Source: Octopus sinensis
Taxonomy: Eukaryota
Assembly: GCF_006345805.1 (NCBI RefSeq)
Contig: NC_043021.1
Coordinates: forward strand, 18,848,001 to 18,912,000
Length of the DNA: 64,000 nucleotides
Reading direction: 5' to 3'
Below, in pieces: positions 5,245-62,462 of the stretch. Both the position numbers and the translations under genes were made by a program. Position 1 is the first letter of the stretch. Each line of letters opens with the position of its first letter. The notes under the pieces were generated by a model. It had not been told where the DNA came from. It ran no database searches and was given only the letters and a program-made list of their open reading frames with translations.

Positions 5245-5965
5245 CAGTGGCACATAAAAGGGCACCATTTGAGTATGATCGTTACCAGCGTTGCCTTACT
5301 GGCACCTGTGCCCGTGTTATAGTGCCCGATCCGAGCGTGATCATTACCAGAACAACCAACTGGCTTCCGTACCTGTGGCACGTAAAAGGGCACCATTCGA
5401 GCATGATCGTTACCAGCGTCGCCTTACTGGCACTTGTGCCTGTGCTAGTAGGGTGCCAAGAGCACCATCTGAGCGTGATCATTGCCAGAGCAGCCAACTT
5501 GCTTCCGTACCTGTGGCACGTAAAAGGGCACCATTCGAGCATGATCGTTACCAGCGTCGCCTTACTGGCACTTGTGCCTGTGCTAGTAGGGTGCCAAGAG
5601 CACCATCTGAGCGTGATCATTGCCAGAGCAGCCAACTTGCTTCCGTACCTGTGGCACGTAAAAGGGCACCATTCGAGCGTGATCGTTACCAACGTTGCTT
5701 CACTGGCACCTGTGCCGGTGGCATGTGCAAAAAGATTCGAGTGAGGTCATTGCCAGTACCGCCTGACTGGTCCTCGTGCCGGTGGCACGTAAAAAGCACC
5801 CACTACACTCTCGGAGTGGTTGGCATTAGGAAGGGCATCCAGCTGTAGAAACTCTGCCAGATCAAGATTGGAGCCTGGTGCAGCCATCTGGTTCGCCAGC
5901 CCTCAGTCAAAATCGTCAAACCCATGCTAGCATGGAAAGCGGATGTTAAACGATGATAATGATGA
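5245..5965 (+). mobile_element. Family E element: ~138-bp internal tandem units plus (GAT)n-tailed 3' module
   Basis: Unit AAAAGGGCACCATTCGAGC... repeated about 3.5 times, then AGCACCCACTACACTCTCGGAGTGG...CATGGAAAGCGGATGTTAAACGATGAT. Confidence 0.8.
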
Positions 5966-7016: not shown

Positions 7017-7370
7017 CATCTTCATCATCATCGTTTAACGTCTGTCTTCCATGCTGGCATGGGTTGGACAGTTTGACTGGGGACTGGCAAGCCAGTAGGC
7101 TGCACCAGGCTCGAAACAGATCTGGCGAGGTTTCCACAGCTGGATACCCTTCCTAACGCCAACCATTCCGAGAGTGTAGTGGGTACTTTTTTATGTGCCA
7201 CTAGCACAGAAGCCAGTCAGGTGACACTGGCATCGACCACGTTCGGATGGTGCTTTTTATGTGTCACCAGCACAGGGAGTCAGTCAGATGGTACTGGCAT
7301 CAACCCACACTTGAATGGTGCTTATTACATGCTACCAGAACGGAACCAGTCAGGCGGCACAATATGCAAT
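7017..7370 (-). mobile_element. Family E element
   Basis: (CAT)n followed by the reverse complement of the family E 3' module and degenerate internal units. Confidence 0.75.
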
Positions 7371-7682
7371 GCTATTGAGTAGGGGTCTGGTTCAGCCTGG
7401 GGCTAAACAACAACTTGACTGTTGACTGGTTTAACCCTTCGGTGTTCAGATTACTATATCAGATGTAATGTTTATTTCTTTTATCTTTTACTTGTTTCAG
7501 TCATTAGACTGTGACCATCCTGGGCACTGCTTTGAAGAACTTTTAGTCAAACGAATCAAACCTACTGCTTATTTTTCTTTTTATATCTGGTACTAATTCT
7601 ATCAGTTTTTTTTGCCAAACTGTTTAGTTATGGGGACATAAACACACCAACACCAGTTGTCAAGTGGTGGTTGGGGACAGAC

Positions 7683-7938
7683 TTGTGCCGGTGGCATGTG
7701 TAAAAAGATTCGAGCGAGGTCATTGTCAGTACTGCCTGACTGGCACTGTGCTGGTGGCACATAAAAAGCACCCACTACACTCTCGGAGTGGTTGGCGTTA
7801 GGAAGGGCATCCAGCTGTAGAAACTCTGCCAGATCAAGATTGGAGCCTGGTGCGGCCGTCTGGTTCGCCAGCCCTCAGTCAAAATCGTCCAACCCATGCT
7901 AACATGGAAGGTGGACGTTAAACGATGATGATGATCAT
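7683..7938 (+). mobile_element. Family E element, 3' part
   Basis: Matches 5720-5965. Confidence 0.85.
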
Positions 7939-15529: not shown

Positions 15530-15992
15530 AGTGCCAGTGGAACATAAAAGGGCACCATTCGAGTGTGATCGTTACCAGTGTTGCCTTACTGGCACTTGTG
15601 CCTGTGCTAGTAGAGTGCCAAAAGCACCATCCGAGCTTGATTGTTGCCAGAGCAGCTAACTGGCTTCCGTGCCGGTGGCATGTAAAAGGGCACCATTCGA
15701 GCGTGATCATTACCAACGTCGCCTTACTGGCACCTGTGCTCGTGGCATGTGTAAAAAGATTTGAACAAGGTCATTGCCAGTACCACCTGACTGGCCCCTG
15801 TGCCGGTGGCACGTAAAAAGCACCCACTATATTCTCGGAGTGGTTGGCATTAGGAAGGGCATCCAGCTGTAGAAACTCTGCCAGATCAAGATTGGAGCTT
15901 GGTGCAGTCATCTGGTTCACCAGACCCCAGTCAAAATCGTCCAACCCATGCTAGCATGGAAAGCGGACGTTAAACAATGATGATGATGATGA
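15530..15992 (+). mobile_element. Family E element with internal units
   Basis: Similar to 5245-5965 but with fewer units. Confidence 0.8.
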
Positions 15993-19149: not shown

Positions 19150-19866
19150 TATCCCTACTTTGACTCTTTAGCATTCAAACTACATGGTTAATGTTATGCT
19201 TATTTATTCATATTGTTTTTGAATTAATCATGCATTATCTCATAGCTTTGAGATTTTGATGACATGATTGTTTATTTTTAGAATGACATTGTAGGGAAGG
19301 TGTGAGAAGTCAGGTGTGGTCAGTTTGAACATAAAACAAATAGAATGTTTGGTTGTGGCTGGTTTAAATGGGTATGGTTTGATTATTGCTGGGGCTTTTT
19401 AACCCTTTAGTATTCAGATCACTCACTCAAATGTATTACTTATTTATTCATATTGTTTTCAATTAATCCTGTATTATCTCTCAGCTTTGAGATTTCAAGG
19501 TAGTGATTGTTTATTTTAAGAATGACATTGTATGGTAGATGTGAGAGGCTGGATTGGACCAGTTTGAACATAAAACAGGTAGAACATCTGGGTTGGATAT
19601 GGCTGGTTTAAATGCTATGGATTTAAGTAATTAGTGCTTAAATCTTTAACATTTAAATTGGTCAAATCTGGCTCAAATATTGCATGTTTTACATTCAAAC
19701 TGGTCATATCTAACCTCTCACTCCTAACCAATTCTAACGCTCTAAAAATAAGCAATCACATCATTGAAATCTCAAAGCCACTTGGTAATGCATGATTAAT
19801 TCAAAACAATGTGAATAAAAAAAGGAATTACATTTGACAGAATAATCTGAACATTAAAGGGTTAAA
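19150..19866. mobile_element. Cluster of three piggyBac-like MITEs (family P1, ~220 bp)
   Basis: Family ends TTAACCCTTTAGCATT / AATGCTAAAGGGTTAA (TTAA target, CCC/GGG TIR ends). Other copies at about 440-668, 20674-21575, 22360-23230, 43350-43550 and 55622-56090. Confidence 0.75.
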
Positions 19867-20490: not shown

Positions 20491-21505
20491 ATTATGGTCC
20501 TTAATGTTCTGAGTTGAAATCCCACCATAATCAGCTTTTTCTTTCATCATTCTGGGATGCGATAAAATTAAATAATAATTCTAGTACAAGGAATACTTTT
20601 AATCAACTGATATTGATGTCTCTCCCAGGCTTCTGGGAATCCTAAACGAATTCTCTTAATTTGATTTGCACATTAACTCTTTAGCATTCAGATTATTCTG
20701 CCAAATGTAATGCTTATTTATTCACATTGTTTTGAATTAATCATGTGTTTTCTCACAGCTTTGAGATTTCAATGATGTGATTATTTTCAGAATGATATTG
20801 CAAGGTAGGTGTGAGAAGTTAGATCTGGCCAGTTTGAACATAAAGCTGGTAGGATATCTGGGCCAGACATGGCTGGTTTAAACCTTTAGTATTCAGATTA
20901 TTCTGTCAAATGTAATAATAAATAAATGCACCCTTTTAAAGCCTAGCCAGGCTCATGGGCCCGGTTTCCCAGTTTCAATGGCGTATGTGTTCCCCATCTG
21001 GACGGGATGCCAGTCCATCACAGCGTTACTCATTTTTGCCAGCTTAGTGAACTGGAGCAATGTGAAATAAAGTGTCTTGCTCAAGGACACAACACACCAC
21101 CGGGAATTGAACTCACGACTTTACGATCATGAGCCGAATGCCCCTAACCACTAAGCCACGCGCCATCACAATTACATTCTGTCAAATGTAATGCTTATTT
21201 ATTCACATTGTTTTGAATTAATCATGCGTTATCTCACAGCTTTGAGATTTCAATGATGTGATTATTTTCAGAATGATATTGTAAGGTAGGTGTGAGAAGT
21301 CAGATCCAGCCAGTTTGAACATAAAGCTGGTAGGATATCTTGGCCAGACATGGCTGGTTTAACCCTTTAGCATTCAGATTACTCTGTCAAAAGCAATGCT
21401 TATTTATTCACATTGCTTTGAATAAATCATGATTTATTTGGTAGCTTTGAGATTTTGATGTTGCGATTGTTTATTTTTAGGATGACATTGTAGGGTAGGT
21501 GTGAG

Positions 21506-22172
21506 AGGCTGCATCTGGCCTGTTTGAACATATAACATGTAGAATACTAAATGTGGCTGGTTTAAAGGCTAAAGGAATGAACTATGCTTGGTTTTCTCAG
21601 CGAAAAATTGCTAACCAAGCAGAGTTCATTCCTTAGCCTTTAAACAGCCACATTTAGTATTCTACATGTTATATGTTCAAACAGGCCAGATGCAGCCTTT
21701 CATCTACTCTCCAATCATCATCATCATCGTTTAGCATGGAAAGCGGACGCTAAACGATGATGATGATGATTGGAGAGTAGATGAAACGCTGTACTGGCCT
21801 GTTTGAACATATAACATGTAGAATACTAAATGTGGCTGGTTTAAAGGCTAAAGGAATGAACTCTCTTGGTTTTCTCAGTGAAAATCTGCTAACCAAGCAG
21901 AGTTCATTCCTTTAGCCTTTAAACCAGCCACATTTAGTATTCTACATGTTATATGTTCAAACAGGCCAGATGCAGCCTTTCATCTACTCTCCATCATCAT
22001 CATCATCGTTTAGCATGGAAAGCGGACGCTAAACGATGATGATGATGATTGGAGAGTAGATGAAACGCTGTATCTGGCCTGTTTGAACATATAACATGTA
22101 GAATACTAAATGTGGCTGGTTTAAAGGCTAAAGGAATGAACTCTGCTTGGTTTTCTCAGAGAAAAATCTGCT
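21506..22172. repeat. Tandem array (~280-bp period, ~2.4 units) of a double-hairpin unit S-L1-S'-L2
   Basis: TGTTTGAACATATAAC starts at 21521, 21800 and 22080; its reverse complement occurs at about 21668-21683 and 21948-21963; loops L1 (~19 nt) and L2 (13 nt) recur in one orientation. Confidence 0.9.
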
Positions 22173-22786
22173 GTTTATTTAGCATGAATTTCAATCTACT
22201 TATTTTTTCCAGAAAAACTCTGACATCATAGCAGAAACCTAAGTTGTTTTTGAGGGAAAAGGCTGAAAATCTTTGTTTCTGTATTAATAACACATAAACT
22301 TGGTCCCAATATAAAGTAAGTTTATTCATACTGGAGACCATCAATTTAGACAATATCTTTAACCCTTAAGCATTTAAATTGACTGTATCCCATCCAAATA
22401 TTCTTCCTGTTTTATTTTCAGACCAGCCAGATCCAGCCTCTCACAACTATCCGACAATATCGTTTTTGATATAAATAATCACATCATTGAAATCCCAAAG
22501 CTACAAGATAATCTATGGTTAATTCAAAACAATGTGAATTAATAAGCATTACATTTGACAGTAATCTGAATGCCAGATTGTTAAAGCAGCCATATCTGGC
22601 CCAAATAATCTACCCGTCTTATATTGAAACCAACCAGATCCTGTCTCCCACACCTACCCTACAATGTCACTCTAACAATAAAGTTATGTCATTGAAATCT
22701 CAAAGCTACAAGATAATCCATGATTAATACAAAACAGTGTAAATAAATAAGAATTACTTTTGACAGAAAATCTGAATGCTAAAGGG

Positions 22787-23010
22787 TTAACCCTTTCATT
22801 ACCATATTTACTTTGAGATGCTCTGTGTTTCTTTCAATTACTTTAAATATAACAAAGTATTTAGTAAAATAAGTTATCATTCAGCTAGTGTTAGGAACAT
22901 AAATTGCGATTAAGGTTTGGTGGAAGATTTTAATTGAAAACTTATGAAAACAAGACACTTGTATTCAGAACCAGAGCTGGTTTCAGCCGGGTTGGTAATG
23001 AAAGGGTTAA
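22787..23010. mobile_element. piggyBac-like MITE family P2, sharing TTAA sites with P1 neighbours
   Basis: TTAACCCTTTCATTACC...GGTAATGAAAGGGTTAA. Other copies at 27229-27458, 42630-43350 (three) and 56720-57195 (two). Confidence 0.8.
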
Positions 23011-23404
23011 TCCAGCCGTGTTTGGCCCAAATATTCTACCTATTTTATGTACAAACTAGCCAAATCTGGCCTCTCACACCTACCCTACAATGTCATTCTA
23101 AAGATAAACAATCACATCATTGAAATTTCAAAGGTATGAGATAATGCATGATTAATACGAAAAACAATGTGACTAGATAAGCATTACATTTGATAAAGTA
23201 ACCGAATGCTAATGGGTTAAGTGGGTTAAATCCTTGATGGAGTCTCTCAGTTCAAGGAGTTTGAAAGCATTGTGCACTTGATAAAGTTCTTTGGAAGTCA
23301 CTTTACACTTTTGCACACTTCTCTGTTTCATTTTACATCATCACATAAGGGTTCTAGCCGGTGCTTACTCATAATCTCCTTTGAATGTGGAACAAGTCCT
23401 CTAT

Positions 23405-29098: not shown

Positions 29099-29610
29099 GG
29101 ACATGGGTTTGCCCACCTTGTAAATGAGTGAGAAAGAGAGAAGTAAGAAAGATCAGGTTTAGGTACAACGTGAATATGAGACAAAATCAGAAGTGCACTG
29201 AGTGAAAATAGTATGACAGATGATTAGCGATAAGGAATGAGCTGAACTCAGAGGATATCAGTTCAGAGTAACAGGAAGTGAAGAAAATATATGTATAGTG
29301 AGGTCGTTGCCAGTGCCGTTGGACTGGCTCCTGTGCAGGTGGCACGTAAAAATCACCATTTGAGTGTGGCAGTTGTCAGTACCACCTGACTGGCCCTCGT
29401 GCCGGTGGCATGTAAAAGCACCCACTACACTCTCGGAGTGGTTGGCGTTAGGAAGGGCATCCAGCTGTAGAAACTCTGCCAGATCAAGATTGGAGACTGG
29501 TGCAGCCATCTGGTTCGCCAGTCCTCAATTAAATCGTCCAACCCATGCTAGCATGGAAAGCAGACGTTAAACGATGATGATGATGATGATATATATATCT
29601 ATCTATTTAT

Positions 29611-30949: not shown

Positions 30950-32070
30950 TCTGGCCATCTATCCATCTGTCTGTCTATCTATCTATCTATATCTATCATA
31001 TATCTATCCATCCATCCATGCCTCCACTCTTCTATCCATCCATCCATCCATCCATGCCTCCACCTTTCTATCTATCCATCCATCCATCCATGCCTCCACC
31101 CTTCTATCCATCCATCTATCCATGCCTCCACCCTTCTATCCCTCCATCCATCCATGCCTCCACCCTTCTATCCATCCATCCATGCCTCCACCTTTCTATC
31201 CATCCATCCATCCACCCTTCTATCCATCCATCCATCCATCCATCCACCCTTCTATCCATCCATGCCTCCACCCTTCTATCCATCCATCCATCCATGCCTC
31301 CACCCTTCCATCCATCCATCCATGCCTCCACCCTTCTATCCATCCATCCATCCATCAATCCATCCATCCATCCATGCCTCCACCTTCTATCAATCATCCA
31401 TGCCTCCACTTTCTAATCCACCATCCATCCACCCTTCTATCTATCCACATCCAAGCCCTCCATCACCCCTTCTCCATCCAGCTCCACCTTTATCCATCCA
31501 TCCATGCCTCCACCCCTCTATCCACACCACCCTCTATCCATCCATGCCTCCACCCTCTATCCACCATCCTATCCACATCCATCCATCCATGCCTCCACCC
31601 TTCTATCCATCCATCCATCCATGCCTCCACCCTTCTATCCATCCATCCATCCATCCATGCCTCCACCCTTCTATCCATCCATCCATCCATGCCTCCACCT
31701 TCTATCCATCCATCCATCCACCCTTCTATCCATCCATCCATCCACCCCTCATCCATCCATGCCTCCACCCTTCATCCATCAATCCATGCTCCACCCCTCT
31801 ATCCATCCATGCCTCCACCCTTCTATCCATCCACCCCTCTATCCATCCATGCCTCCATCCATCCATCCATCCATCCATGCCTCCACCCTTCTATCCATCC
31901 ATCCATCCATGCCTCACCCTTCTATCCATCCATCCATCCATCCATCCATCCATGCCTCCACCCTTCTATCCATCCATCCATCCATCCATCCATGCCTCCA
32001 CCCTTCTATCCATCCATGCCTCCACCCTTCCATCCATCCATCCATCCATCCATCCATCCATCCATCCACC
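30950..32070. repeat. (CCAT)n-based minisatellite with core CCATGCCTCCACCCTTCTAT
   Basis: Direct inspection; explains ORFs 30810-32314. Confidence 0.95.
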
Positions 32071-32559
32071 CATCTCACCATCCCTTAATCATACGCTCTT
32101 AAAACTCTGTATTGCATTCTTCACCTCTCAATTTCTTTATTTCATACCAATGAGAGATGTGTGCATTCTTTTATGCATGTGTGTGTGTGCGTGTACGTGT
32201 AGTCGCAAGCATGGTTGTGTGGTTAAAAAGTTTGCTTCCCAACCACATGGGTCCGGGTTCAGTCCCGCTGCATGGCACCTTGGTCAAATGTCTTCTACAA
32301 CAGTCCTGGACTGATTGAAACCTGTAAGTGAATTTGGGAAACAGAAACTGAAAGAAACTTGCCATGTGTGTGTGTTTGTTTGTTTACATCTGTGCTACCT
32401 CAGACAAAAGTTACGACATGAAGTTGTGTTGTTATTTGCACTTTTGTCAATAAACAGCCCATTCACATCATGCTTTTGAAGGCCCTTGAATTGAGAAACC
32501 CCTTACTTGAAAACAGGTAAGGGTTAGCATCAGGAAGAGCATCCACCTCTATCACTATA

Positions 32560-35639: not shown

Positions 35640-37714
35640 TTTAGGGTATGTGTTGTTTATGAAGAGTGTTCCAGTTGACCCATTCTATTGACTCATATGC
35701 TATTCTGTTGAATTGACAATGTTTTGTGCAAGATAGGGACTGTTCCTTGCAGAGATTTGTTTGGTAGGCAGTGTATAGTGTCATGTGTCCTGGTGCTGAT
35801 TCTAAATTTCTTTCCATAATTTTGTAAACTGTGCCTAATGCTCCAGTTACTACTAGTGCCATTTTCATGACTAATGCTCCAGTTACTAGCAGTACCATTA
35901 GAATTCCTAATACTCCAGTTACTAGCAGTACCATTAGAATTCCTAATGCTCCAGTTACCAGTGTTACCATTAAAATGCCTAATGATCCAGTTACTACCAG
36001 TGCCATTTTCATGACTAATGCTCCAGTTATTAGCAGTACCATTTTCATGACTAATGCTCCAGTTACTAGCAGTTCCATTTTTATGCCTAATGCTCCAGTT
36101 ACTAGTGTTACCATTAAAATGCCTAATGCTCCAGTAACTACTAGTACCATTTTCATGCCTAATGCTCCAGTTACTAGTGTTACCATTAAAATTCCTAATG
36201 CTCCAGTAACTACTAGTACCATTTTCATGCCTAATGCTCCAGTTACTAGTGTTACCATTAGAATTCCTAATGCTCCAGTTACTAGCAGTACCATTTTCAT
36301 GCCTAATGCTCCAGTTACTAGTGGTACCATTAAAATTCCTAATGCTCCAGTTACTAGCAGTACCATTAAAATTCCTAATGCTCCAGTTACTAGCAGTACC
36401 ATTAAAATTCCTAATGCTCCAGTAACTACTAGTACCATTTTCATGCCTAATGCTCCAGTTATAGCAGTACCATTAAAATTCCTAATGCTCCATTTACTAG
36501 CAGTACCATTAAATTCCTAATGCTCCAGTTACTAGCGGTACCATTAAAATTCCTAATGCTCCAGTTACTAGCAGTACCATTAAAATTCCTAATGCTCCAG
36601 TAACTACTAGTGCCATTTTCATGCCTAATGCTCCAGTTACTAGTGTTACCATTAAAATTCCTAATGCTCCAGTTACTAGCAGTACCATTAAAATTCCTAA
36701 TGCTCCAGTAACTACTAGTACCATTTTCATGCCTAATGCTCCAGTTACTAGTGTTACCATTAAAATTCCTAATGCTCCAGTAACTACTAGTACCATTTTC
36801 ATGACTAATGCTCCAGTTACTAGTGTTACCATTAAAATTCCTAATGCTCCAGTAACTACTAGTACCATTTTCATGCCTAATGCTCCAGTTACTAGTGTTA
36901 CCATTAGAATTCCTAATGCTCCAGTTACTAGCAGTACCATTTTCATGCCTAATGCTCCAGTTACTAGTGGTACCATTAAAATTCCTAATGCTCCAGTTAC
37001 TAGCAGTACCATTAGAATTCCTAATGCTCCAGTTACTAGCAGTACCATTAGAATTCCTAATACTCCAGTTACTACTAGTACCATTTTCATGACTAATGCT
37101 CCAGTTACTAGCAGTACCATTAAAATTCCTAATGCTCCAGTTACTAGCAGTACCATTAGAATTCCTAATGCTCCAGTTACTAGTAGTACCATTAAAATTC
37201 CTAATGCTCCAGTTACTACTAGTGCCATTTTCATGACTAATGCTCCAGTTACTAGCAGTACCATTAGAATTCCTAATGCTCCAGTTACTAGCAGTACCAT
37301 TAGAATTCCTAATACTCCAGTTTCTAGTAGTACCATTTTCATGACTAATGCTCCAGTTACTAGCAGTACCATTTTCATGACTAATGCTCCAGTTACTAGT
37401 GGTACCATTAGAATTCCTAATACTCCAGTTACTAGCAGTATCATTAAAATTCCTAATGCTCCAGTTACTAGTGGTACCATTAAAATGCCTAATGATCCAG
37501 TTACTACTAGTGCCATTTTCATGACTAATGCTCCAGTTACTAGCAGTACCATTAAAATTCCTAATGCTCCCATTACTAGTGGTGCCTGTTTCACTCTCAT
37601 ACCCTACATTTGAATATCTCAGTGTCAAGGGCCTTGTATTTTTATAATTTCTCTACTCCTTTTCAGGCAATATTTTCATTAGAAGAGATTGCAATGCCTA
37701 TCACTGTGCACATA
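35640..37714 (-). mobile_element. R4/Dong-clade C-terminal relic split by a minisatellite
   Basis: 5' flank CTVIGIAISSNENIA*KGVEKL*KYKALDTEIF/KM*GMRVKQAPLVMGALG; 3' flank GTVYKIMERNLESAPGHM.../SLQGTVPILHKTLSIQ. Confidence 0.8.
35831..37574. repeat. 36-bp minisatellite, about 48 units
   Basis: CCTAATGCTCCAGTTACTAGCAGTACCATTAAAATT with alternating variants (TTCATG, AGAATT). Confidence 0.95.
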
Positions 37715-51699: not shown

Positions 51700-54300
51700 A
51701 CACAGCATAGAGTATGTCACAATATACACACCATAAAGTACCCCACAATATATACACCATATAGTACCTAAAGACATACACATGCACATACCATAAAGTA
51801 CCTCACGACACAGGCACATACACACTAGAGTACTCCCCACACCATAAAGTACCCCACAATATATGCACCATATAGTACCTCAAGACATACACATGCACAC
51901 ACCATGAAGTACCTCACAACACAGCACATACACACTAGAGTACTCCCCACACCATAAAGTACCCCACATATATACACCATATAGTACCTCAAGACATACA
52001 CATGCACACACCATAAAGTACCTCACGACACAGGCACATACACACTAGAGTACTCCCCACACCATAAAGTACCCCACAATATATACACCATATAGTACCT
52101 CAAGACATACACATGCACACACCATAAAGTACCTCACGACACAGGCACATAGACACTAGAGTACTCCCCATACTATAAAGTCCCCCACAATATATACACC
52201 ATATTGTACCTCAAGACAGACACATGCACACACCATAAAGTACCTCACAACACAGGAAAATACACACTAGAGTACTCACCATAAAGTACCCTGTAATATA
52301 TACACCATATAGTACCTCAAGACATACACATGCACACACCATGAAGTACCTCACAACACAGGCACATACACAATAGAGTACTCCCCACACCATAAAGTAC
52401 CCCACAATATATGCACCATATAGTACCTAAAGACATACACATGCACACCCATAAAGTACCTCACACACAGGCACATACACACTAGAGTACTCACCACACA
52501 TAAAGTACCTCACACACAGGCACATACACACTAGAGTACTCCCCACACCATAAAGTACCCCACAATATATACACCATATAGTACCTCAAGACATACACAT
52601 GCACACACCATGAAGTACCTCACAACACAGGCACATACACACTAGAGTACTCCCCACACCATAAAGTACCCCACAATATATACACCATATAGTACCTCAA
52701 GACATACACATGCACACACCATAAAGTACCTCACGACACAGGCACATACACACTAGAGTACTCCCCACACCATAAAGTACCCCACAATATATACACCATA
52801 TAGTACCTCAAGACATACACATGCACACACCATAAAGTACCTCACGACACAGGCACATAGACACTAGAGTACTCCCCATACTATAAAGTACCCCACAATA
52901 TATACACCATATTGTACCTCAAGACAGACACATGCACACACCATAAAGTACCTCACAACACAGGAACATACACACTAGAGTACTCACCACACCATAAAGT
53001 ACCCTGTAATATATACACCATATAGTACCTCAAGACATACACATGCACACACCATGAAGTACCTCACAACACAGGCACATACACAATAGAGTACTCCCCA
53101 CACCATAAAGTACCCCACAATATATGCACCATATAGTACCTCAAGACATACACATGCACACACCATAAAGTACCTCACGACACAGGCACATACACACTAG
53201 AGTACTCCCCACACCATAAAGTACCCCACAATATATACACCATATTGTACCTCAAGACAGACACATGCACACACCATAAAGTACCTCACGACACAGGCAC
53301 ATACACACTAGAGTACTCCCCACACCATAAAGTACCCCACAATATATACACCATATTGTACCTCAAGACAGACACATGCACACACCATAAAGTACCTCAC
53401 GACACAGGCACATACACACTAGAGTACTCCCCATACTATAAAGTACCCCACAATATATACACCATATAGTACCTCAAGTCATACACATGCACACACCATA
53501 AAGTACCTCACAACACAGGCACATACACACTAGAGTACTCACCACACCATAAAGTACCCCACAATATATACACCATATAGTACCTCAAGACATACACATG
53601 CACACACCATGAAGTACCTCATGACACAGGCACATACACACTAGAGTACTCCCCACACCATAAAGTACCCCACAATATATGCACCATATAGTACCTAAAG
53701 ACATACACATGCACACACCATAAAGTACCTCACGACACAGGCACATAGACACTAGAGTACTCCCCATACTATAAAGTACCCCACAATATATACACCATAT
53801 AGTACCTCAAGTCATACACATGCACACACCATAAAGTACCTCACAACACAGGCACATACACACTAGAGTACTCACCACACCATAAAGTACCCCACAATAT
53901 ATACACCATATAGTACCTCAAGACATACACATGCACACACCATGAAGTACCTCATGACACAGGCACATACACACTAGAGTACTCCCCACACCATAAAGTA
54001 CCCCACAATATATGCACCATATAGTACCTAAAGACATACACATGCACACACCATAAAGTACCTCACAACACATGTACATACACACTAGAGTACTCCCCAC
54101 ACCAAAAAGTACCCCACAATATATTCACCATATAGTACCTCAAGAAATACACATGCACACACCATAAAGTACCTCATGGCATAAGCACATACACACTAGA
54201 GTACTCCCCACACCATAAAGTATTCCATAATATATGCACCATATAGTACCTCAAGACATACACATGTACACACCATAAAGTACCTCACAGCATACACACA
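51700..54300. repeat. ~111-bp higher-order minisatellite, about 23 units
   Basis: Unit of four AGTAC-core sub-repeats; equivalent positions at 52061 and 52172. Confidence 0.92.
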
Positions 54301-57730: not shown

Positions 57731-58411
57731 ATGTTTGGTGTATTGAGAAGTACTGTCTCGAAAATAATGGCAACCTTTGAGACAGAGGGAAAAAACCTTC
57801 TCGTCGAAACAAAATTCCAGAACAAAACCAAAACTTTCAGATAGGGACCATCAGACTCTCTTACATGAATTGTTAGAAAGGATCACAAAAGTACAGCTCC
57901 CAAAATTACTGCAGGGCTTAATAACCACCTTGAGAAACCAGTTTCCACTAAAACTGTTCACCGGGCGCTGCACAAAGCCAGATTTCATAGGAGGGCTTCA
58001 ATCAGAAAATCACTACTTTCAAAAACAAACGTTGCAAAGTGATTAGAGCAGAGTAAAAACCTACAAAATTGGTCCTTAAAGCAGTGGAAGAATGTTATTT
58101 TCTCAGACGAGTCATCCTTTACCCTATTTCTGACCACTGGCTGAGTATACGTATAGAGACAGCCAAAAGAAGCAGATGACCTAGACTGCCTTCTTCCAAC
58201 TGTTAAACATGGAGGAGGATCTGTGATGATCAGGGGGAGGGGCTATATCTTGGAAATCCACCGGCCCAATGGTTTCCCTTCATGGCAGGATTAATAGTCA
58301 AGACCATTTAAGCATTTTATCTGATCAAATTCATCCTATGATTGTGGAACTGTTTCCAGAGGGAAACACAATCTTTCAGGATGATAATACACCAATTCAC
58401 TCAGCTAAAGT
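57731..58411 (+). mobile_element. Tc1-like transposase pseudogene fragment
   Basis: KPKLSDRD...VSTKTVHRALHKA...WKNVIFSDESSF...TVKHGGGSVMI...IFQDDNTPIHSAK with stops and frameshifts; third catalytic residue missing. Confidence 0.85.
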
Positions 58412-59202
58412 TCTTGCTGACAACAGTATGTGACACCAGTATCTGCCACAATTGTGACTTTGCTCTCCACGATGGGTCTTCTTCTCAAGCAGTTCTTCTT
58501 ACATATATATATATATGAGAAAACACCATCCGTTCGTGGCCGTTTGCCAGCTCTGTCTGGCACCTGTGCAGGTGGCACGTAAAAAGCACCCACTACACTC
58601 ACGGAGTGGTTGGCATTAGGAAGGGCATCCAGCCGTAGAAACACTGCCAAATCTGACTGGGCCTGATGAAGCCTTCCGGCTTCACAGACCCCAGTTAAAC
58701 CGTCCAACCCATGCTAGCATGGAAAACAGACGCTAAATGATGTTGATGATGATGATGATGATATATTATAGATATAGGGTGAAAAATTATTAATTTATAA
58801 TTAATAAATTTCACCAAGCAGTTTCGGTATGGAAAAGAACCATATTTGGTAAAAACTTATACAAGAAGTTTTATATATAATTATAACAATAATTAAGGGT
58901 TTAGCAACGAGTTGCTTAACCACATACCGAAAACTTTAGAAATAGCAGCCAAAAGACTGTTATTTCTATTCGCTTAATTATTGTTATAAATATATATATA
59001 TATATATAGATATATATATATATATATAACTCCAAGAAAGTTAGAGGTTGTGAACCCAACCAACTAAGGGATAATATCTATCCAATATACTGCTGGTAGA
59101 ATACCCAGTTATTAATACACAAGTGTTTTTTATTGCATTGCAATTACATTAGCAAGTGTACTAAATGGGTGATGGTAAAGAGTTATCCTACCATTAATTT
59201 AC

Positions 59203-59399
59203 AGAGCAATAAGAAAATGGAGGGGATCAATAGGTGGTATTCGTCAACTTTTAGACATTATATTATGTTAACTTATTTATTTATTTATTTACTAAAATGA
59301 CAATTACTGTCATTTTAGTAAATAAATAAATAAATTGACATAATATAATGTCTAAAAGTTGACGAATACCACCTATTGATCCCCTCCATTTTCTTATTG

Positions 59400-59403
<4 letters not shown>
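59203..59403. repeat. Near-perfect inverted repeat, ~98-bp arms, 5-nt loop
   Basis: AGAGCAATAAGAAAATGG...AATGACA-attac-TGTCATT...CCATTTTCTTATTGCTCT; two mismatches and one extra TATT unit. Confidence 0.95.
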
Positions 59404-60589: not shown

Positions 60590-62000
60590 TATTGTCTCCG
60601 TGTTTGGTTGCTGCTGTGTCTGTCTTGTCTTAATGTCTGTCTGTGGCTATGTCTATCTTGGATTGTATGTCTGTCTGTGACTCTGTCCATCTCTGTCTGT
60701 ATGTCTGTCTGTCTGTGGCTATGTCTACCTTGGATTGTATGTCTGTCTGTGGCTTTGTCTGTTCCATCTGTATATATGTCTGTGGCTATGTCTATTTTGG
60801 ATTGTATGTCTGTCTGTGGCTATGTCTATCTCGGATTGTATGTCCGTCTGTGGCTATGTCTATCTCGGATTGTATGTCTGTATGTGGCTATGTATATTCA
60901 ATCGTATGTCTGTCTGTCGTGGCTTTGTCTGTTCCATTTGTATGTCTGTCTGTGGCTATGTCTATCTTGGATTTTATGTCTGTCTGTGGCTATGTCTATC
61001 TCGGATTGTATGTCCGTCTGTGGCTATGTCTATCTCGGATTGTATGTCCGTCTGTGGCTATGTCTATCTCATGGTATGTCTGTCTGTCTGTGGCTTTGTC
61101 TGTTCCATTTGTATGTCTGTCTGTGGCTATGTCTATCTTGGATTTTATGTCTGTCTGTGGCTATGTCTATCTCGGATTGTATGTCCGTCTGTGGCTATGT
61201 CTATCTCGGATTGTATGTCCGTCTGTGGCTATGTCTATCTCGGATTGTATGTCCGTCTGTGGCTATGTCTATCTCGGATTGTATGTCTGTCTGTGGCTAT
61301 GTCTATCTTGGATTGTATGTCTGTCTGTGGCTATGTCTATCTTGGATTGTATGCCACCCCGTGGCTTTGTCTATCTCATCTGTATGTCTGTCTGTCTGTG
61401 GCTTTGTCTGTTCCATTTGTATGTCCGTCTGTGGCTATGTCTATCTTGGATTTTATGTCTGTCTGTGGCTATGTCTATCTTGGATTGTATGTCTGTCTGT
61501 GGCTATGTCTATCTTGGATTGTATGTCTCTCTATGGCTTTGTCTGTTCCATCTGTATGTCTGTCTGTGGCTTTGTCTGTTCCATCTGTATGTCTGTCTGT
61601 GGCTATGTCTATCTTGGATTTTATGTCTGTCTGTGGCTATGTCTATCTTGGATTGTATGTCTGTCTGTGGCTATGTCTATCTTGGATTGTATGTCTGTCT
61701 GTGGCTATGTCTATCTTGGATTGTATGTCTGTCTGTGGCTTTGTCTGTTCCATCTGTATGTCTGTCTGTGGCTATGTCTATCTTGGATTGTATGTCTGTC
61801 TGTGGCTATGTCTATCTTGGATTGTATGTCTGTCTGTGGCTATGTCTATCTTGGATTGTATGTCTGTCTGTGGCTATGTCTATCTTGGATTGTATGTCTG
61901 TCTGTGGCTATGTCTATCTTGGATTGTATGTCATCCCGTGGCTTTGTCTATCTCATCTGTATGTCTGTGGCTATGTCTATTCCATCTGTATGTCCGTCTG
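60590..62000. repeat. 33-34-bp minisatellite
   Basis: GTCTGTCTGTGGCTATGTCTATCTTGGATTGTAT with variant GGCTTTGTCTGTTCCATCTGTAT; explains ORFs 60563-62126. Confidence 0.95.
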
Positions 62001-62462
62001 TGGCTATGTCTATCTAGTTTGTATGTTTGTGTGTGTGTTGTGTGTGTGTCTATGTCCTTCTACTCTGTTTGTCTCTCCCTGGCTACGCCTATCTTGTCAC
62101 TAGATCTATCTAGCCTGTATATTTAATTGTGGCTATGTCTAACTCGTCTGTAGTTTGTTTCTATCCGTGCCTGTCTGGGTCTGGTTTGTAGGTTTGTATG
62201 TCTGCGGCTATGTCTATCTTGTCTGCTTGTCACTTGTCAAGTAAAATGCCTCCTAAAAATCATACATACATACATACACACTCATATGCACATGCATGTA
62301 CATACGCATATACACACATGCTTGTACATACATACATACATTCATACACATGTGCATACATACTCACTCACATGAACATACACATGCATTTATACATTCA
62401 ATTATTTATCTGACACACCCAACTTTTCAGTTATTAATTAGTGCAAGTGGTTCGTTCAGATT

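What the first reader, a model, noticed from the sequence alone, without database searches (positions are those of the whole stretch)
21506..22172. Head-to-tail concatemer of a 280-nt dumbbell: possible rolling-circle footprint of a rod-like circle
Seen: S(part)-L1-S'-L2-S-L1-S'-L2-S-L1, with arms of ~123 bp, L1 at 21594-21612, 21872-21890 and 22153-22172, and L2 ATGGAAAGCGGAC at 21736-21748 and 22015-22027. Loops keep one orientation. S and S' differ at two positions (AAACGCTGTA versus AAAGGCTGCA) in both units, so the whole unit was copied, not re-folded each time. S is a chimera of a family E (GAT)n tail, a P1 MITE end and local unique DNA. Inference: circularised, the unit is an almost fully paired closed rod, and rolling-circle or reverse-transcriptase copying of it would give exactly this array. 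Alternatives are double template switching plus tandem duplication, or an artefact: the many 1-bp indels between units look like poorly polished long-read sequence.
Basis: partly seen in the sequence, partly recalled or inferred. Interest (0 to 1): 0.8.

Follow-up and report, generated by a model that had tools for sequence, protein, structure and literature searches.

The report
SINE-tail fold-back grown into palindromic array
The 2.4-unit "dumbbell concatemer" is present as described, but it looks like a one-locus DNA rearrangement, not the footprint of a free circular replicon: a fold-back at the hairpin-prone 3' end of a very abundant SINE (a spot where the same fold-back recurs at about 30 other places in this genome), followed by duplication of the resulting 279-bp unit.

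Summary
Window 21502-22172 reads S0-L1-S'-L2-S-L1-S'-L2-S-L1, with ~123-nt arms, a 279-nt period and 2.4 copies. Loop orientation is constant, and two S/S' substitutions recur in both units.

The arm is a chimera of three parts:
- the last 22 nt of a SINE ("E", at least 86,000 copies, (GAT)n tail);
- the 3' third of a piggyBac-type MITE ("P1");
- 18 nt of DNA unique to this locus.

The unit, L1 and the right flank occur nowhere else in the 2.7-Gb genome. No ribozyme, viroid family, Rep signal or ORF is present.

L2 is the native 3' half of the SINE's terminal stem-loop. The S'|L2 junction sits on a native 4-nt inverted repeat (TAGC..GCTA) at the centre of a 14-nt palindrome. The same turn-around, with locally mirrored tail variants, occurs at about 30 other SINE-E copies.

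Best reading: an in-situ fold-back seeded at that hot spot. I favour cDNA snap-back during SINE retroposition. A replication-fork template switch (small inverted triplication) is a close rival. Either would then need a blunt second junction at L1, two point changes and a one-unit tandem duplication.

A rolling-circle replicon is not supported. An assembly artefact is not excluded.

The parts
21363..21501 (+). Left flank: 5' two-thirds of P1 MITE copy B (TTAA|CCCTTTAGC... start), near-consensus P1 sequence up to ...GGTAGGTGTGAGA
   Evidence: Aligns to P1 paralogues over B coordinates 1-193 at 76-81%. TTAA|CCCTTTAGC terminus. P1 consensus of the 21493 region.
21502..21593 (+). S0: partial arm. 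It is the 3' third of a P1 copy (to ~21576) plus 18 nt of locus-unique DNA. It carries the S'-type variant GGCTGCA.
   Evidence: 98% complementary to S'2 (I7). Five-arm alignment. Near-identity to S starts abruptly at about 21502-21508; upstream it is P1-type, about 75% identical to S.
21594..21612 (+). L1a loop (TTCTCAGCGAAAAATTGCT), native local unique DNA
21613..21735 (-). S'1: inverted copy of the full arm, ending ...(ATC)5 CGTTTAGC
21736..21748 (+). L2a loop ATGGAAAGCGGAC. It is the native 3' half of the SINE-E terminal stem-loop, in canonical orientation relative to S.
   Evidence: Paralogues read GCTAGC-ATGGAAAGCGGAC-GTTAAACGATGAT. RNA fold.
21749..21871 (+). S1: full arm. GCTAAAC + (GAT)5 (SINE-E 3' end), then 85 nt of P1 3' third starting at P1's usual SINE-E insertion site, then 18 nt unique. 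Carries the variant CGCTGTA.
21872..21890 (+). L1b loop
21891..22014 (-). S'2: second inverted arm
22015..22027 (+). L2b loop. It and its flanks are identical to L2a over 80 nt (the 13-nt loop plus 22 nt on the S' side and 45 nt on the S side).
   Evidence: D3, 100% over 80 nt.
22028..22152 (+). S2: full arm. 22028-22034 GCTAAAC; 22035-22049 (GAT)5; 22050-22134 P1 3' third; 22135-22152 unique.
22153..22172 (+). L1c loop, continuous with the unique right flank
22173..22368 (+). Right flank, single-copy in the 2.72-Gb genome
   Evidence: only self-matches.
22369..22770 (-). Two inverted P1 MITE copies facing copies A and B. Together they are a larger 75-90% inverted repeat that brackets the locus (context, not part of the array).
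   Evidence: I1, I4, I6, I13, I17.

Best explanation
This is a one-off rearrangement made in place, not a replicon.

Step 1 (inferred). A strand running out of the SINE-E 3' end folded back on itself. The turn sits at the SINE's terminal stem-loop, where a native 4-nt inverted repeat (TAGC...GCTA, 13 nt apart) lies at the centre of the 14-nt palindrome CCATGCTAGCATGG. The strand then copied the SINE tail, about 85 nt of the P1 MITE into which the SINE was inserting, and 18 nt of unique flank. That produced S'-L2-S.

I favour cDNA snap-back during target-primed reverse transcription of a 5'-truncated SINE-E insertion. In that model reverse transcription stops at the apical CUAG loop, the cDNA 3' end GCTA pairs with TAGC in the cDNA, and synthesis continues back over the cDNA and into the single-stranded target strand.

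Step 2 (inferred). The top-strand end, 19 nt beyond the end of the snap-back copy, was joined bluntly and primed second-strand synthesis around the hairpin. L1 was left as a loop, and S-L1 was left as a roughly 111-nt direct (target-site-type) duplication. The result is S-L1-S'-L2-S-L1, or 1.4 units.

Step 3. Two point changes arose in the right-hand S. That they are new changes is shown; their timing is inferred.

Step 4 (inferred). Slippage or unequal exchange between the 142-nt direct repeats S-L1 added one whole 279-bp unit, which copied the two changes.

Step 5 (inferred). Unequal exchange between adjacent tandem P1 copies replaced the sequence upstream of S0 with copy B.
For: In-situ origin:
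- The arm contains 18 nt of locus-unique DNA. L1 and the right flank are single-copy.
- The unit and its E-specific 27-mer occur nowhere else, even allowing 3 mismatches.
- Array length equals the native S0-L1 plus two units.

L2 and S are contiguous exactly as in the canonical SINE-E. S' replaces the SINE body at TAGC. No SINE-E body end lies between 7.1 and 29.5 kb of the window.

The SINE tail abuts P1 at the same GAT|ATTG site where SINE-E sits in P1 copies at other loci (L011, L014, L016).

Recurrence:
- The pattern ATCRTTTARC-L2-GYTAAAYGAT gives 233 hits at <=3 mismatches against 0 for reversed controls, and 20 exact hits of which 18 are elsewhere. The left arm co-varies with the right arm.
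- About 30 of 52 loci read (ATC)n directly upstream of the turn.
- The predicted mirror extensions, including locus-specific tail interruptions, were confirmed at C12:37900803 (97%), C15:41790013 (95%), C14:3730899 (94%) and C17:28614477 (92%). The one 5'-truncated control that returned a hit stopped at the known part.

SINE-E is young and very active: at least 86,123 canonical 3' ends, many perfect.

The junction coincides with the apical loop of the predicted 3' stem-loop. The snap-back hairpin is the MFE fold of the truncated cDNA.

[quoted passage not shown] L1-associated hairpin and foldback junctions are documented too (PMC11702581).

The S variant (C,T) is a new change on the S0/S' background. 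S0 and S' share a rare derived C (GCTGCATC) seen in 1 of 31 other P1 copies sampled, and the T of S is seen in none. Both S copies share the change, so a whole unit was duplicated after it arose.
Against: - A direct repeat of ~111 nt would be an unusually long target-site duplication.
- The 20 nt upstream of S0 are copy-B type, not S type (5-6 differences in 20 nt). An extra P1xP1 exchange, or a donor that is absent from the assembly, must be assumed.
- The two S/S' differences are not explained by the snap-back itself.
- Arm lengths at the other fold-back loci are known only through the microsatellite (>=23-35 nt).
- Enrichment of the perfectly complementary GCTAAA variant among fold-backs is weak: 10/18 against 38% in ordinary copies.
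- The partner LINE, its endonuclease motif and any read-level support were not examined.
Confidence: 0.45

Rival explanations
1. Replication-fork template switching produced a small inverted triplication (SIT / ODIRA / DUP-TRP/INV-DUP type) of a pre-existing full-length SINE-E sitting in a P1 copy.

A nascent strand, Okazaki-fragment sized, switched to the complementary strand at L1. It switched back at the TAGC/GCTA repeat next to the (GAT)n microsatellite. A later slippage event added one unit. A P1xP1 exchange then removed the first copy's SINE body.
For: - The architecture and scale match published SITs: DUP/INV/DUP medians 148/160/148 bp, spacer ~30 bp, junction ~6 bp reverse-complementary, and breakpoints near microsatellites (PMC13334657). 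Here the values are 111-142/123/142 bp, spacers of 19 and 13 nt, and a J2 microhomology of 4 nt lying 7 nt from (GAT)5.
- ODIRA junctions use pre-existing 2-14-bp interrupted inverted repeats, and secondary deletions of an arm are seen (PMC10766183).
- SINE-E inside P1 at this site is a common pre-existing substrate.
- With at least 86,000 identical substrates, recurrence at one inverted repeat is possible.
- Error-prone synthesis after a switch could give the two S changes and the excess of 1-nt deletions.
Against: - J1 (L1|S') has no microhomology or pre-existing inverted repeat.
- No SINE body or canonical first L2 remains at the locus.
- None of about 20 other fold-back loci scored showed a second same-strand L2-tail nearby, as a DUP-INV-DUP would. 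This is weak evidence, because the size of the candidate windows is unknown.
- Both spacers are shorter than the 40-80 bp preferred in ODIRA.
Confidence: 0.28
2. The array, or its copy number, is an assembly or consensus artefact of long-read sequencing.
For: - Seven private 1-nt deletions and three different bases at one L1 position lie within 670 nt. The adjacent older duplicate shows 0 indels over 222 nt. This points to a locally poor consensus where short-read polishing cannot place reads.
- No alternative haplotig of the locus exists for cross-checking.
- The assembly's size and contig count match my unverified recollection of a PacBio CLR + Hi-C octopus assembly.
Against: - The loops are genomic sequence (a SINE segment and local unique DNA), not adapters.
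- The two S/S' substitutions recur in both units, unlike random error.
- Both ends are continuous with native flanks.
- The same L2 fold-back occurs at dozens of other loci.
- Wild-type yeast gave 0 SIT reads in about 3 million PacBio HiFi reads, so the chemistry does not readily create such structures (PMC13334657).
- A single chimeric read would be outvoted in a consensus.
Confidence: 0.12
3. One reading: a free 279-nt dumbbell (rod-like circle of DNA or RNA) was copied by rolling-circle synthesis or by reverse transcriptase, and the concatemer integrated. An ODIRA-like hairpin-capped extrachromosomal intermediate that reintegrated by homology would be a variant of this.
For: - Head-to-tail periodicity with constant loop orientation and periodic S/S' mismatches. 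This excludes iterative self-primed doubling, which would flip L1.
- The unit folds into an almost perfect rod.
- Hairpin-capped extrachromosomal intermediates are proposed in ODIRA.
Against: - The unit is absent from the rest of the 2.7-Gb genome.
- The array ends are at homologous native positions.
- There are only 2.4 copies.
- No hammerhead, HDV, twister or hairpin ribozyme and no viroid family appears at E <= 10, and nothing at gathering thresholds.
- No Rep gene or nick motif is present.
- A 123-bp duplex is too small to hold a replication bubble.
- A tandem duplication explains the periodic mismatches equally well.
Confidence: 0.05
4. A mobile foldback (hairpin) MITE inserted here and was tandemly repeated.
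For: The genome is full of palindromic MITEs, for example window 59203-59403 with more than 1,700 candidate copies.
Against: - Neither S-L1-S' nor S'-L2-S occurs anywhere else.
- The arm contains locus-unique DNA.
- There is no TA or TTAA duplication at the array ends.
Confidence: 0.01

Closest known systems
cDNA snap-back 5' junctions in target-primed reverse transcription (R2-protein PRINT insertions, PMC11371274; L1-associated hairpin/foldback junctions, PMC11702581)
   Same: - The retroelement 3' end and tail abut the downstream target.
- The element is 5'-truncated at the turn.
- An antisense copy of the cDNA, continuing into nearby target DNA, lies upstream.
- The far junction is a blunt 'join'.
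- The turn recurs at a fixed position of one element family.
   Different: - These are natural, germline-fixed SINE events rather than engineered or over-expressed elements.
- The inverted copy here runs about 100 nt into the target.
- A direct duplication of ~111 nt is implied.
- The product was later duplicated in tandem.
- The reverse transcriptase and its LINE were not identified here.
Small inverted triplications (SIT; Lei et al. 2026, PMC13334657) and DUP-TRP/INV-DUP or ODIRA inverted triplications (PMC11293582, PMC10766183, PMC4689423)
   Same: - DUP-INV-DUP order.
- Okazaki-fragment-scale arms (111-142/123/142 nt).
- Short spacers (19 and 13 nt).
- A reverse-complementary microhomology at one junction.
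- Proximity to a microsatellite.
- Instability by slippage between the direct repeats.
   Different: - The second junction is blunt.
- The reference state upstream (SINE body plus first L2) is missing.
- One extra whole unit is present.
- The turn-around is tied to one position of a SINE family at about 30 loci.
L1 twin priming / 5'-inverted insertions (my own knowledge; also described in PMC11702581)
   Same: A retroposition by-product in which part of the insert is inverted.
   Different: Twin priming inverts the 5' part of the element by a second priming on the RNA. Here the inverted segment is a copy of the tail plus target DNA, a true palindrome.
Viroids, retrozymes and other rod-like circular RNAs; rolling-hairpin (parvovirus-type) and dumbbell/LAMP-type amplification (my own knowledge)
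   Same: - A unit of ~280 nt that folds into a rod.
- A concatemer of alternating orientation.
   Different: - No ribozyme, no family match, no other copies and no Rep or nick site.
- Rolling-hairpin or self-primed doubling would give flip and flop loop orientations, whereas the loops here are constant.

Membership tests
TPRT cDNA snap-back insertion | Retroelement 3' end with its tail is joined to downstream target DNA in sense orientation | tested here: met
   L2-GCTAAAC-(GAT)5 is followed by P1 sequence from P1's usual SINE-E insertion site.
TPRT cDNA snap-back insertion | Element 5'-truncated at the turn, with an antisense copy of the cDNA immediately upstream | tested here: met
   S' ends (ATC)5CGTTTAGC directly before L2. 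The nearest SINE-E body-end matches in the window are at 7.1 and 29.5 kb, none near the array.
TPRT cDNA snap-back insertion | Self-complementarity at the turn that lets the cDNA 3' end prime on itself | tested here: met
   TAGC/GCTA lie 13 nt apart at the centre of the palindrome CCATGCTAGCATGG. This hairpin is the MFE fold of the truncated cDNA, but it is weak at -0.9 kcal/mol.
TPRT cDNA snap-back insertion | Target-site duplication flanking the insertion | tested here: inconclusive
   S0-L1 and S-L1 form a ~111-nt direct repeat that could be a long TSD. The 20 nt upstream of S0 do not match S.
TPRT cDNA snap-back insertion | Recurrence at independent insertions of the same element | tested here: met
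   About 30 further loci have (ATC)n-RTTTARC-L2-GYTAAAY-(GAT)n. Locally mirrored tail variants were confirmed at four of them.
TPRT cDNA snap-back insertion | Dependence on a LINE reverse transcriptase and endonuclease (partner LINE, nick motif) | not tested
   The partner LINE was not identified. A biochemical test is not possible with these tools.
Small inverted triplication / DUP-TRP/INV-DUP / ODIRA | Direct-inverted-direct order of one segment | tested here: met
   S0-L1 / S' / L2-S-L1.
Small inverted triplication / DUP-TRP/INV-DUP / ODIRA | Both junctions at pre-existing short inverted repeats (reverse-complementary microhomology) | tested here: not met
   J2 is met (TAGC/GCTA, 4 nt). J1 (..ATCTGCT|AACCAAGC..) has no microhomology, and no native inverted repeat explains it.
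Small inverted triplication / DUP-TRP/INV-DUP / ODIRA | Unrearranged reference sequence retained upstream of the first copy | tested here: not met
   Upstream of S0 is P1 copy B, not the SINE-E body plus L2 plus tail. A secondary deletion would have to be assumed.
Small inverted triplication / DUP-TRP/INV-DUP / ODIRA | Size scale of arms and spacers | tested here: met
   111-142/123/142 nt with spacers of 19 and 13 nt, against published medians of 148/160/148 and 30.
Viroid-like / ribozyme-bearing circular RNA or retrozyme | Self-cleaving ribozyme or a match to a viroid/retrozyme RNA family | tested here: not met
   Rfam: nothing at gathering thresholds. At E <= 10 there were only sub-threshold miRNA- and snoRNA-type hairpin hits.
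Viroid-like / ribozyme-bearing circular RNA or retrozyme | Many genomic or episomal copies of the unit | tested here: not met
   The unit is found only at this locus in 2.72 Gb.
Rolling-hairpin / rolling-circle replicon | Rep or nickase gene, nick site, or flip/flop terminal orientations | tested here: not met
   The only long ORFs in the window lie in simple repeats or minisatellites, and the six scanned gave only weak repeat-driven Pfam hits and no Rep. The loops are in one orientation only.
Foldback MITE family | Dispersed copies with target-site duplications | tested here: not met
   No other copy exists. Compare window 59203-59403, which has more than 1,700 candidates.

The most novel reading that the evidence does not exclude
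SINE snap-back hairpins in this genome occasionally become closed, about 280-nt hairpin-capped (dumbbell) DNA molecules. These would be copied round and round by a strand-displacing polymerase or the LINE reverse transcriptase, and would reintegrate by homology. The array would then be the footprint of a microDNA-like, rolling-circle-amplified intermediate born from retroposition errors.
Probability: 0.05. Interest if true: 0.8.

Novelty: new member of a known kind. Interest (0 to 1): 0.4.

Why it matters
The array itself is a tidy example of a known class of rearrangement (fold-back or inverted triplication, then slippage). It shows how such a product can mimic a rolling-circle concatemer.

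The more useful result is the by-product. One defined position in the 3' stem-loop of a very abundant, young SINE is a recurrent fold-back hot spot, with about 30 germline-fixed cases among at least 86,000 copies.

If the snap-back reading is right, these loci are a natural record of an error mode of target-primed reverse transcription that has so far been documented mainly in engineered R2 and L1 systems. They are also a source of new perfect hairpins: potential small-RNA precursors, fragile sites, and seeds for palindromic tandem arrays.

If the replication reading is right, they are the first germline catalogue of small inverted triplications outside yeast mutants and tumours.

Tried and rejected
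- **Rfam.** Scans at gathering thresholds and at E <= 10 over 21300-22400 gave no ribozyme or viroid family.
- **Pfam.** The window's few long ORFs gave only weak, repeat-driven hits. They were no help in naming the organism and there is no Rep.
- **Donor search.** I searched for a donor of the E-specific segment with the whole unit and with a 27-mer at <=3 mismatches. None was found, so models that need a paralogous DNA or RNA donor are weakened.
- **Truncated SINE body.** I looked for a truncated SINE-E body near the array. There is none.
- **Transposase-hairpin origin.** Rejected. The hairpin centres are 18 nt or more from the P1 terminus and inside the SINE, not at a transposon end.
- **SMRTbell-adapter read-through.** Rejected. 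The two loops differ and both are genomic sequence.
- **Iterative self-primed doubling (rolling hairpin, LAMP-like, breakage-fusion-bridge).** Rejected, because L1 would alternate in orientation.
- **Scan for other multi-centre palindromic arrays.** None in the window or in 200 kb of neighbouring sequence. Single palindromes there are foldback MITEs or head-to-head SINE pairs. Further sampling was blocked.
- **Long-gap patterns.** 35-place patterns and a concatenated predicted-palindrome BLAST were used instead.
- **GCTAAA variant.** Tested for enrichment among fold-backs: 10/18 against 38%, not significant.
- **Literature search by SINE sequence strings.** No hits. The organism remains unverified.
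Full report
**1. The observation.**
- Window 21502-22172 reads S0(92 nt)-L1-S'-L2-S-L1-S'-L2-S-L1. The arms are 123-125 nt, L1 is 19-20 nt and L2 is 13 nt.
- Tandem Repeats Finder reports period 279, 2.4 copies and 96% matches. It is the only array of this kind among 41 tandem-repeat rows in the window.
- One unit folded as single-stranded DNA gives -135.7 kcal/mol, z = -33.
- Neither loop is self-complementary, and both keep one orientation.
- S1 and S2 read AAACGCTGTA. S0 and the complements of both S' read A(A/G)AGGCTGCA.
- The remaining differences among the five arms and three L1 copies are seven private 1-nt deletions, one substitution near L1 in S0, and three different bases at L1 position 8. 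The 80 nt spanning L2 are identical in both copies.
- A neighbouring older duplicate (20695-20916 vs 21176-21397) differs by 13 substitutions and no indel. The excess of 1-nt deletions is therefore specific to the array. It is either a locally poor long-read consensus or error-prone synthesis.

**2. The setting.**
- The window is a gene-poor, repeat-rich piece (C25:18,848,001-18,912,000) of a 2.72-Gb eukaryotic assembly with 13,516 contigs.
- That size and contig count match my recollection of a PacBio + Hi-C octopus assembly (named). I could not verify this, and nothing below depends on it.

**3. What the arm is made of.**
- *P1 element.* The ~205-bp element to the left ("P1") is a very abundant repeat, with 4,975 first-look candidates. 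In 21 of 23 sampled copies it starts TTAA|CCCTTTAGC, so it is a piggyBac-type MITE. It is often found in tandem dimers.
- *Copy B.* Copy B (21363 to ~21576) aligns to paralogues over its whole length. S0 is simply its 3' third plus 18 nt of flank.
- *L2 and the first 22 nt of S.* These are the ordinary 3' end of a SINE ("E")...GTCCAACCCATGCTAGC-ATGGAAAGCGGAC-G(T/C)TAAAC-(GAT)n. In six other copies in the window the tail is followed by six different flanks, so (GAT)n is the true end of the SINE.
- *Abundance of E.* The genome holds at least 86,123 canonical E 3' ends, many of them perfect 33-mers.
- *Preferred site.* At other loci (L011, L014, L016) E sits inside P1 copies at the same GAT|ATTG site at which the tail meets P1 sequence in S.
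- *Unique parts.* The last 18 nt of S, L1 and the 196-nt right flank are single-copy in the genome.
- *No copy elsewhere.* The full unit, and the 27-mer GATGATTGGAGAGTAGATGAAASGCTG, occur nowhere else.

The palindrome was therefore built at this locus from local DNA. It is not a member of any repeat family.

**4. Which junctions are new.**
- L2->S is native (canonical SINE order and orientation).
- S'->L2 is new. The canonical sequence has ...CCATGCTAGC before L2, whereas the array has ...CGTTTAGC. The junction lies in TAGC, which is complementary to the GCTA that starts S. It sits at the centre of the perfect 14-nt palindrome CCATGCTAGCATGG.
- In the predicted RNA fold, L2 is the 3' half of a two-tier terminal stem-loop and the junction is its apical CUAG loop.
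- S->L1->right flank is the simplest native order. L1->S' is then the second new junction, and it has no microhomology (..ATCTGCT|AACCAAGC..).
- S' is thus the copied arm at both loops.
- The array equals the native S-L1 plus exactly two inserted 279-bp units.

**5. The unexpected result: the L2 turn-around is recurrent.**
- A pattern for the fold-back (ATCRTTTARC-L2-GYTAAAYGAT) lies six mismatches from the canonical SINE. It hits 233 places at <=3 mismatches, against 0 for the reversed controls. Twenty hits are exact, and 18 of those are elsewhere in the genome.
- The left arm co-varies with the right arm: TTTAAC with GTTAAA, TTTAGC with GCTAAA, ATCA with TGAT.
- Reading the 15 nt upstream at 52 loci shows (ATC)n directly before the turn at about 30. 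The rest are point-mutated or 5'-truncated SINEs.
- I concatenated the predicted palindromes of a dozen loci and let BLAST report the extents. The mirror-image extension, including locus-specific interruptions of the microsatellite, was confirmed at C12:37900803 (97%, also 82% on the opposite strand over 76 nt), C15:41790013 (95%), C14:3730899 (94%) and C17:28614477 (92%).
- In the same search the one 5'-truncated control that returned a hit (C1:43814621), and three other non-fold-back loci, stopped at the known part.
- Each fold-back was therefore copied locally.
- No other listed locus has two turn-arounds within 1 kb. The case here, with 123-nt arms, a second loop and a tandem copy, is the extreme one.

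**6. Mechanism.** Two known processes make such a fold-back.

(a) *cDNA snap-back during target-primed reverse transcription.*
[quoted passage not shown] Blunt "join" junctions dominate for 5'-truncated inserts (PMC11371274).
- L1 also gives hairpin and foldback junctions carrying reverse-transcribed sequence (PMC11702581).

(b) *Replication-fork template switching.*
- Small inverted triplications have DUP/INV/DUP medians of 148/160/148 bp, ~30-bp spacers, ~6-bp reverse-complementary junctions and breakpoints near microsatellites (PMC13334657).
- ODIRA and DUP-TRP/INV-DUP events are the larger-scale equivalents.

I favour (a), modestly, for five reasons:
- the turn is tied to one position at the 3' end of a young, highly active SINE;
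- the SINE is truncated exactly at the turn and no SINE body is present;
- the tail meets P1 at the SINE's usual insertion site;
- the far junction is blunt;
- none of about 20 other fold-back loci showed a second same-strand L2-tail nearby (weak evidence).

Three points favour (b):
- the scale fits;
- a ~111-nt target-site duplication would be unusually long;
- SINE-E already sitting in P1 is a common substrate.

Either way the first product is S-L1-S'-L2-S-L1 (1.4 units).

**7. From 1.4 to 2.4 units, and the two mismatches.**
- Among 31 other P1 copies sampled, the first mismatch position is G or A, never C. The second is almost always G. S0 and S' share a rare C there (GCTGCATC), seen in one other copy. 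The T of S is seen in none.
- The S variant therefore arose by two new changes on the S0/S' background. It did not come from an independent donor.
- Both S copies carry the changes, so one whole unit was duplicated after they arose. Slippage or unequal exchange between the 142-nt direct repeats S-L1 would do this. The SIT paper names that same instability.
- Repeated de novo cycling on one duplex would not reproduce the same two changes. Self-primed doubling would flip L1.
- A rolling circle on a mismatched dumbbell would also reproduce the pattern. Nothing else supports it.

**8. What remains unexplained.**
- The 20 nt upstream of S0 are near-consensus P1 (copy-B type). The corresponding 17 nt of S and S' (TTGGAGAGTAGATGAAA) differ at 5-6 positions, and identity then jumps to ~100%.
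- The simplest account is an unequal exchange between adjacent tandem P1 copies, of the kind seen as "secondary deletions" in ODIRA products. This is inference.
- Three different bases at one L1 position, and the 1-nt deletions, may be consensus errors.

**9. Artefact?** I could not see reads. Five observations argue against an artefact:
- the loops are genomic sequence;
- the S/S' changes are periodic;
- the flanks are continuous;
- the same fold-back occurs at many other loci;
- wild-type yeast gave 0 SIT-like reads in about 3 million PacBio HiFi reads.

The copy number of the array is less secure than its existence.

**10. Verdict.**
- The rolling-circle reading is not supported.
- The array is a locally made fold-back (inverted-triplication-type) rearrangement seeded at a recurrent SINE 3' hairpin hot spot, then expanded by one unit.
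- It is a new member of a known kind. The hot spot is the part worth following up.

Noticed in passing
G000 genome-wide; e.g. C12:37900803-37900872, C15:41790013-41790070, C14:3730899-3730968, C17:28614477-28614545, C1:75457761-75457842, C4:1839249-1839301, C21:22142908-22142975: About 30 further loci carry a fold-back of the SINE-E 3' end around the same 13-nt loop ((ATC)n-RTTTARC-ATGGAARRCRGAC-GYTAAAY-(GAT)n). The arms mirror locus-specific tail variants. This is a recurrent hot spot, roughly 1 per 2,500 SINE-E copies.
   Followed up: partly
window 5600-5960, 7026-7350(-), 7600-7930, 15650-15985, 29250-29580, 58400-58745: SINE 'E': at least 86,123 canonical 3' ends in the genome, many perfect. 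The 3' end forms a two-tier stem-loop (CGUCC..CCAUG-CUAG-CAUGG..GGACG) containing the perfect 14-nt palindrome CCATGCTAGCATGG, followed by G(T/C)TAAAC and a (GAT)n tail. The GCTAAA variant has 13,368 copies and GTTAAA has 21,498. E inserts repeatedly into P1 MITEs at GAT|ATTG.
   Followed up: partly
window 19164-19845, 20677-20916, 21158-21576, 22369-22770, 23001-23201: A cluster of at least 8 copies of a ~205-bp piggyBac-type MITE (TTAA|CCCTTTAGCATTCAGATT...GCTAAAGGG|TTAA) in both orientations, often as tandem dimers sharing the TTAA. Copies A and B face inverted copies D' and E' around about 240 nt of unique DNA, like a foldback element with tandem-repeat arms.
   Followed up: partly
window 20673-20916 vs 21154-21397: A local 481-bp-period duplication, 94% identical, with 13 substitutions and no indels. 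This contrasts with the indel-rich array.
   Followed up: yes
window 21601, 21879, 22160 (L1 position 8): Three different bases (C, T, A) occupy the same loop position in three otherwise near-identical copies. All seven indels in the array are private 1-nt deletions. The cause is either consensus error in an unpolishable repeat or hypermutable hairpin-tip or error-prone synthesis.
   Followed up: partly
window 59203-59403: A near-perfect 201-nt palindrome (94% self-complementary) that belongs to a high-copy foldback MITE family (more than 1,700 first-look candidates). Many genomic hits match only one arm.
   Followed up: yes
L042 1740-2084 (C25:19,073,740-19,074,084): Two copies of another abundant SINE (TTTTACTTGTTTCAGTCATTTGACTGCGG...) lie head-to-head, forming a 345-nt palindrome at 89% around a GAGTATATATACTC centre. 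This could be another fold-back product or two independent insertions.
   Followed up: no
window 35834-37580, 60633-62035, 51727-54288, 31002-32083: Large minisatellite and satellite blocks: 36 nt x 48.6, 34 nt x 41.4, 111 nt x ~23, and (ATCC)n of ~1.1 kb. These account for almost all the long ORFs and the extreme GC/AT skews in the window.
   Followed up: no
G000 C6:706631-706665, C9:24598982-24599016, C5:112855712-112855746: Other inverted junctions occur at the same SINE-E region with different turn points. Examples are rc(SINE body end) TAGCATGGGTTGGACG joined to (A/G)TTTARC-L2, and an inverted GGACGTTAAACGA joined before GTTTAGC-L2. The whole 3' stem-loop region appears prone to strand switching.
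   Followed up: no
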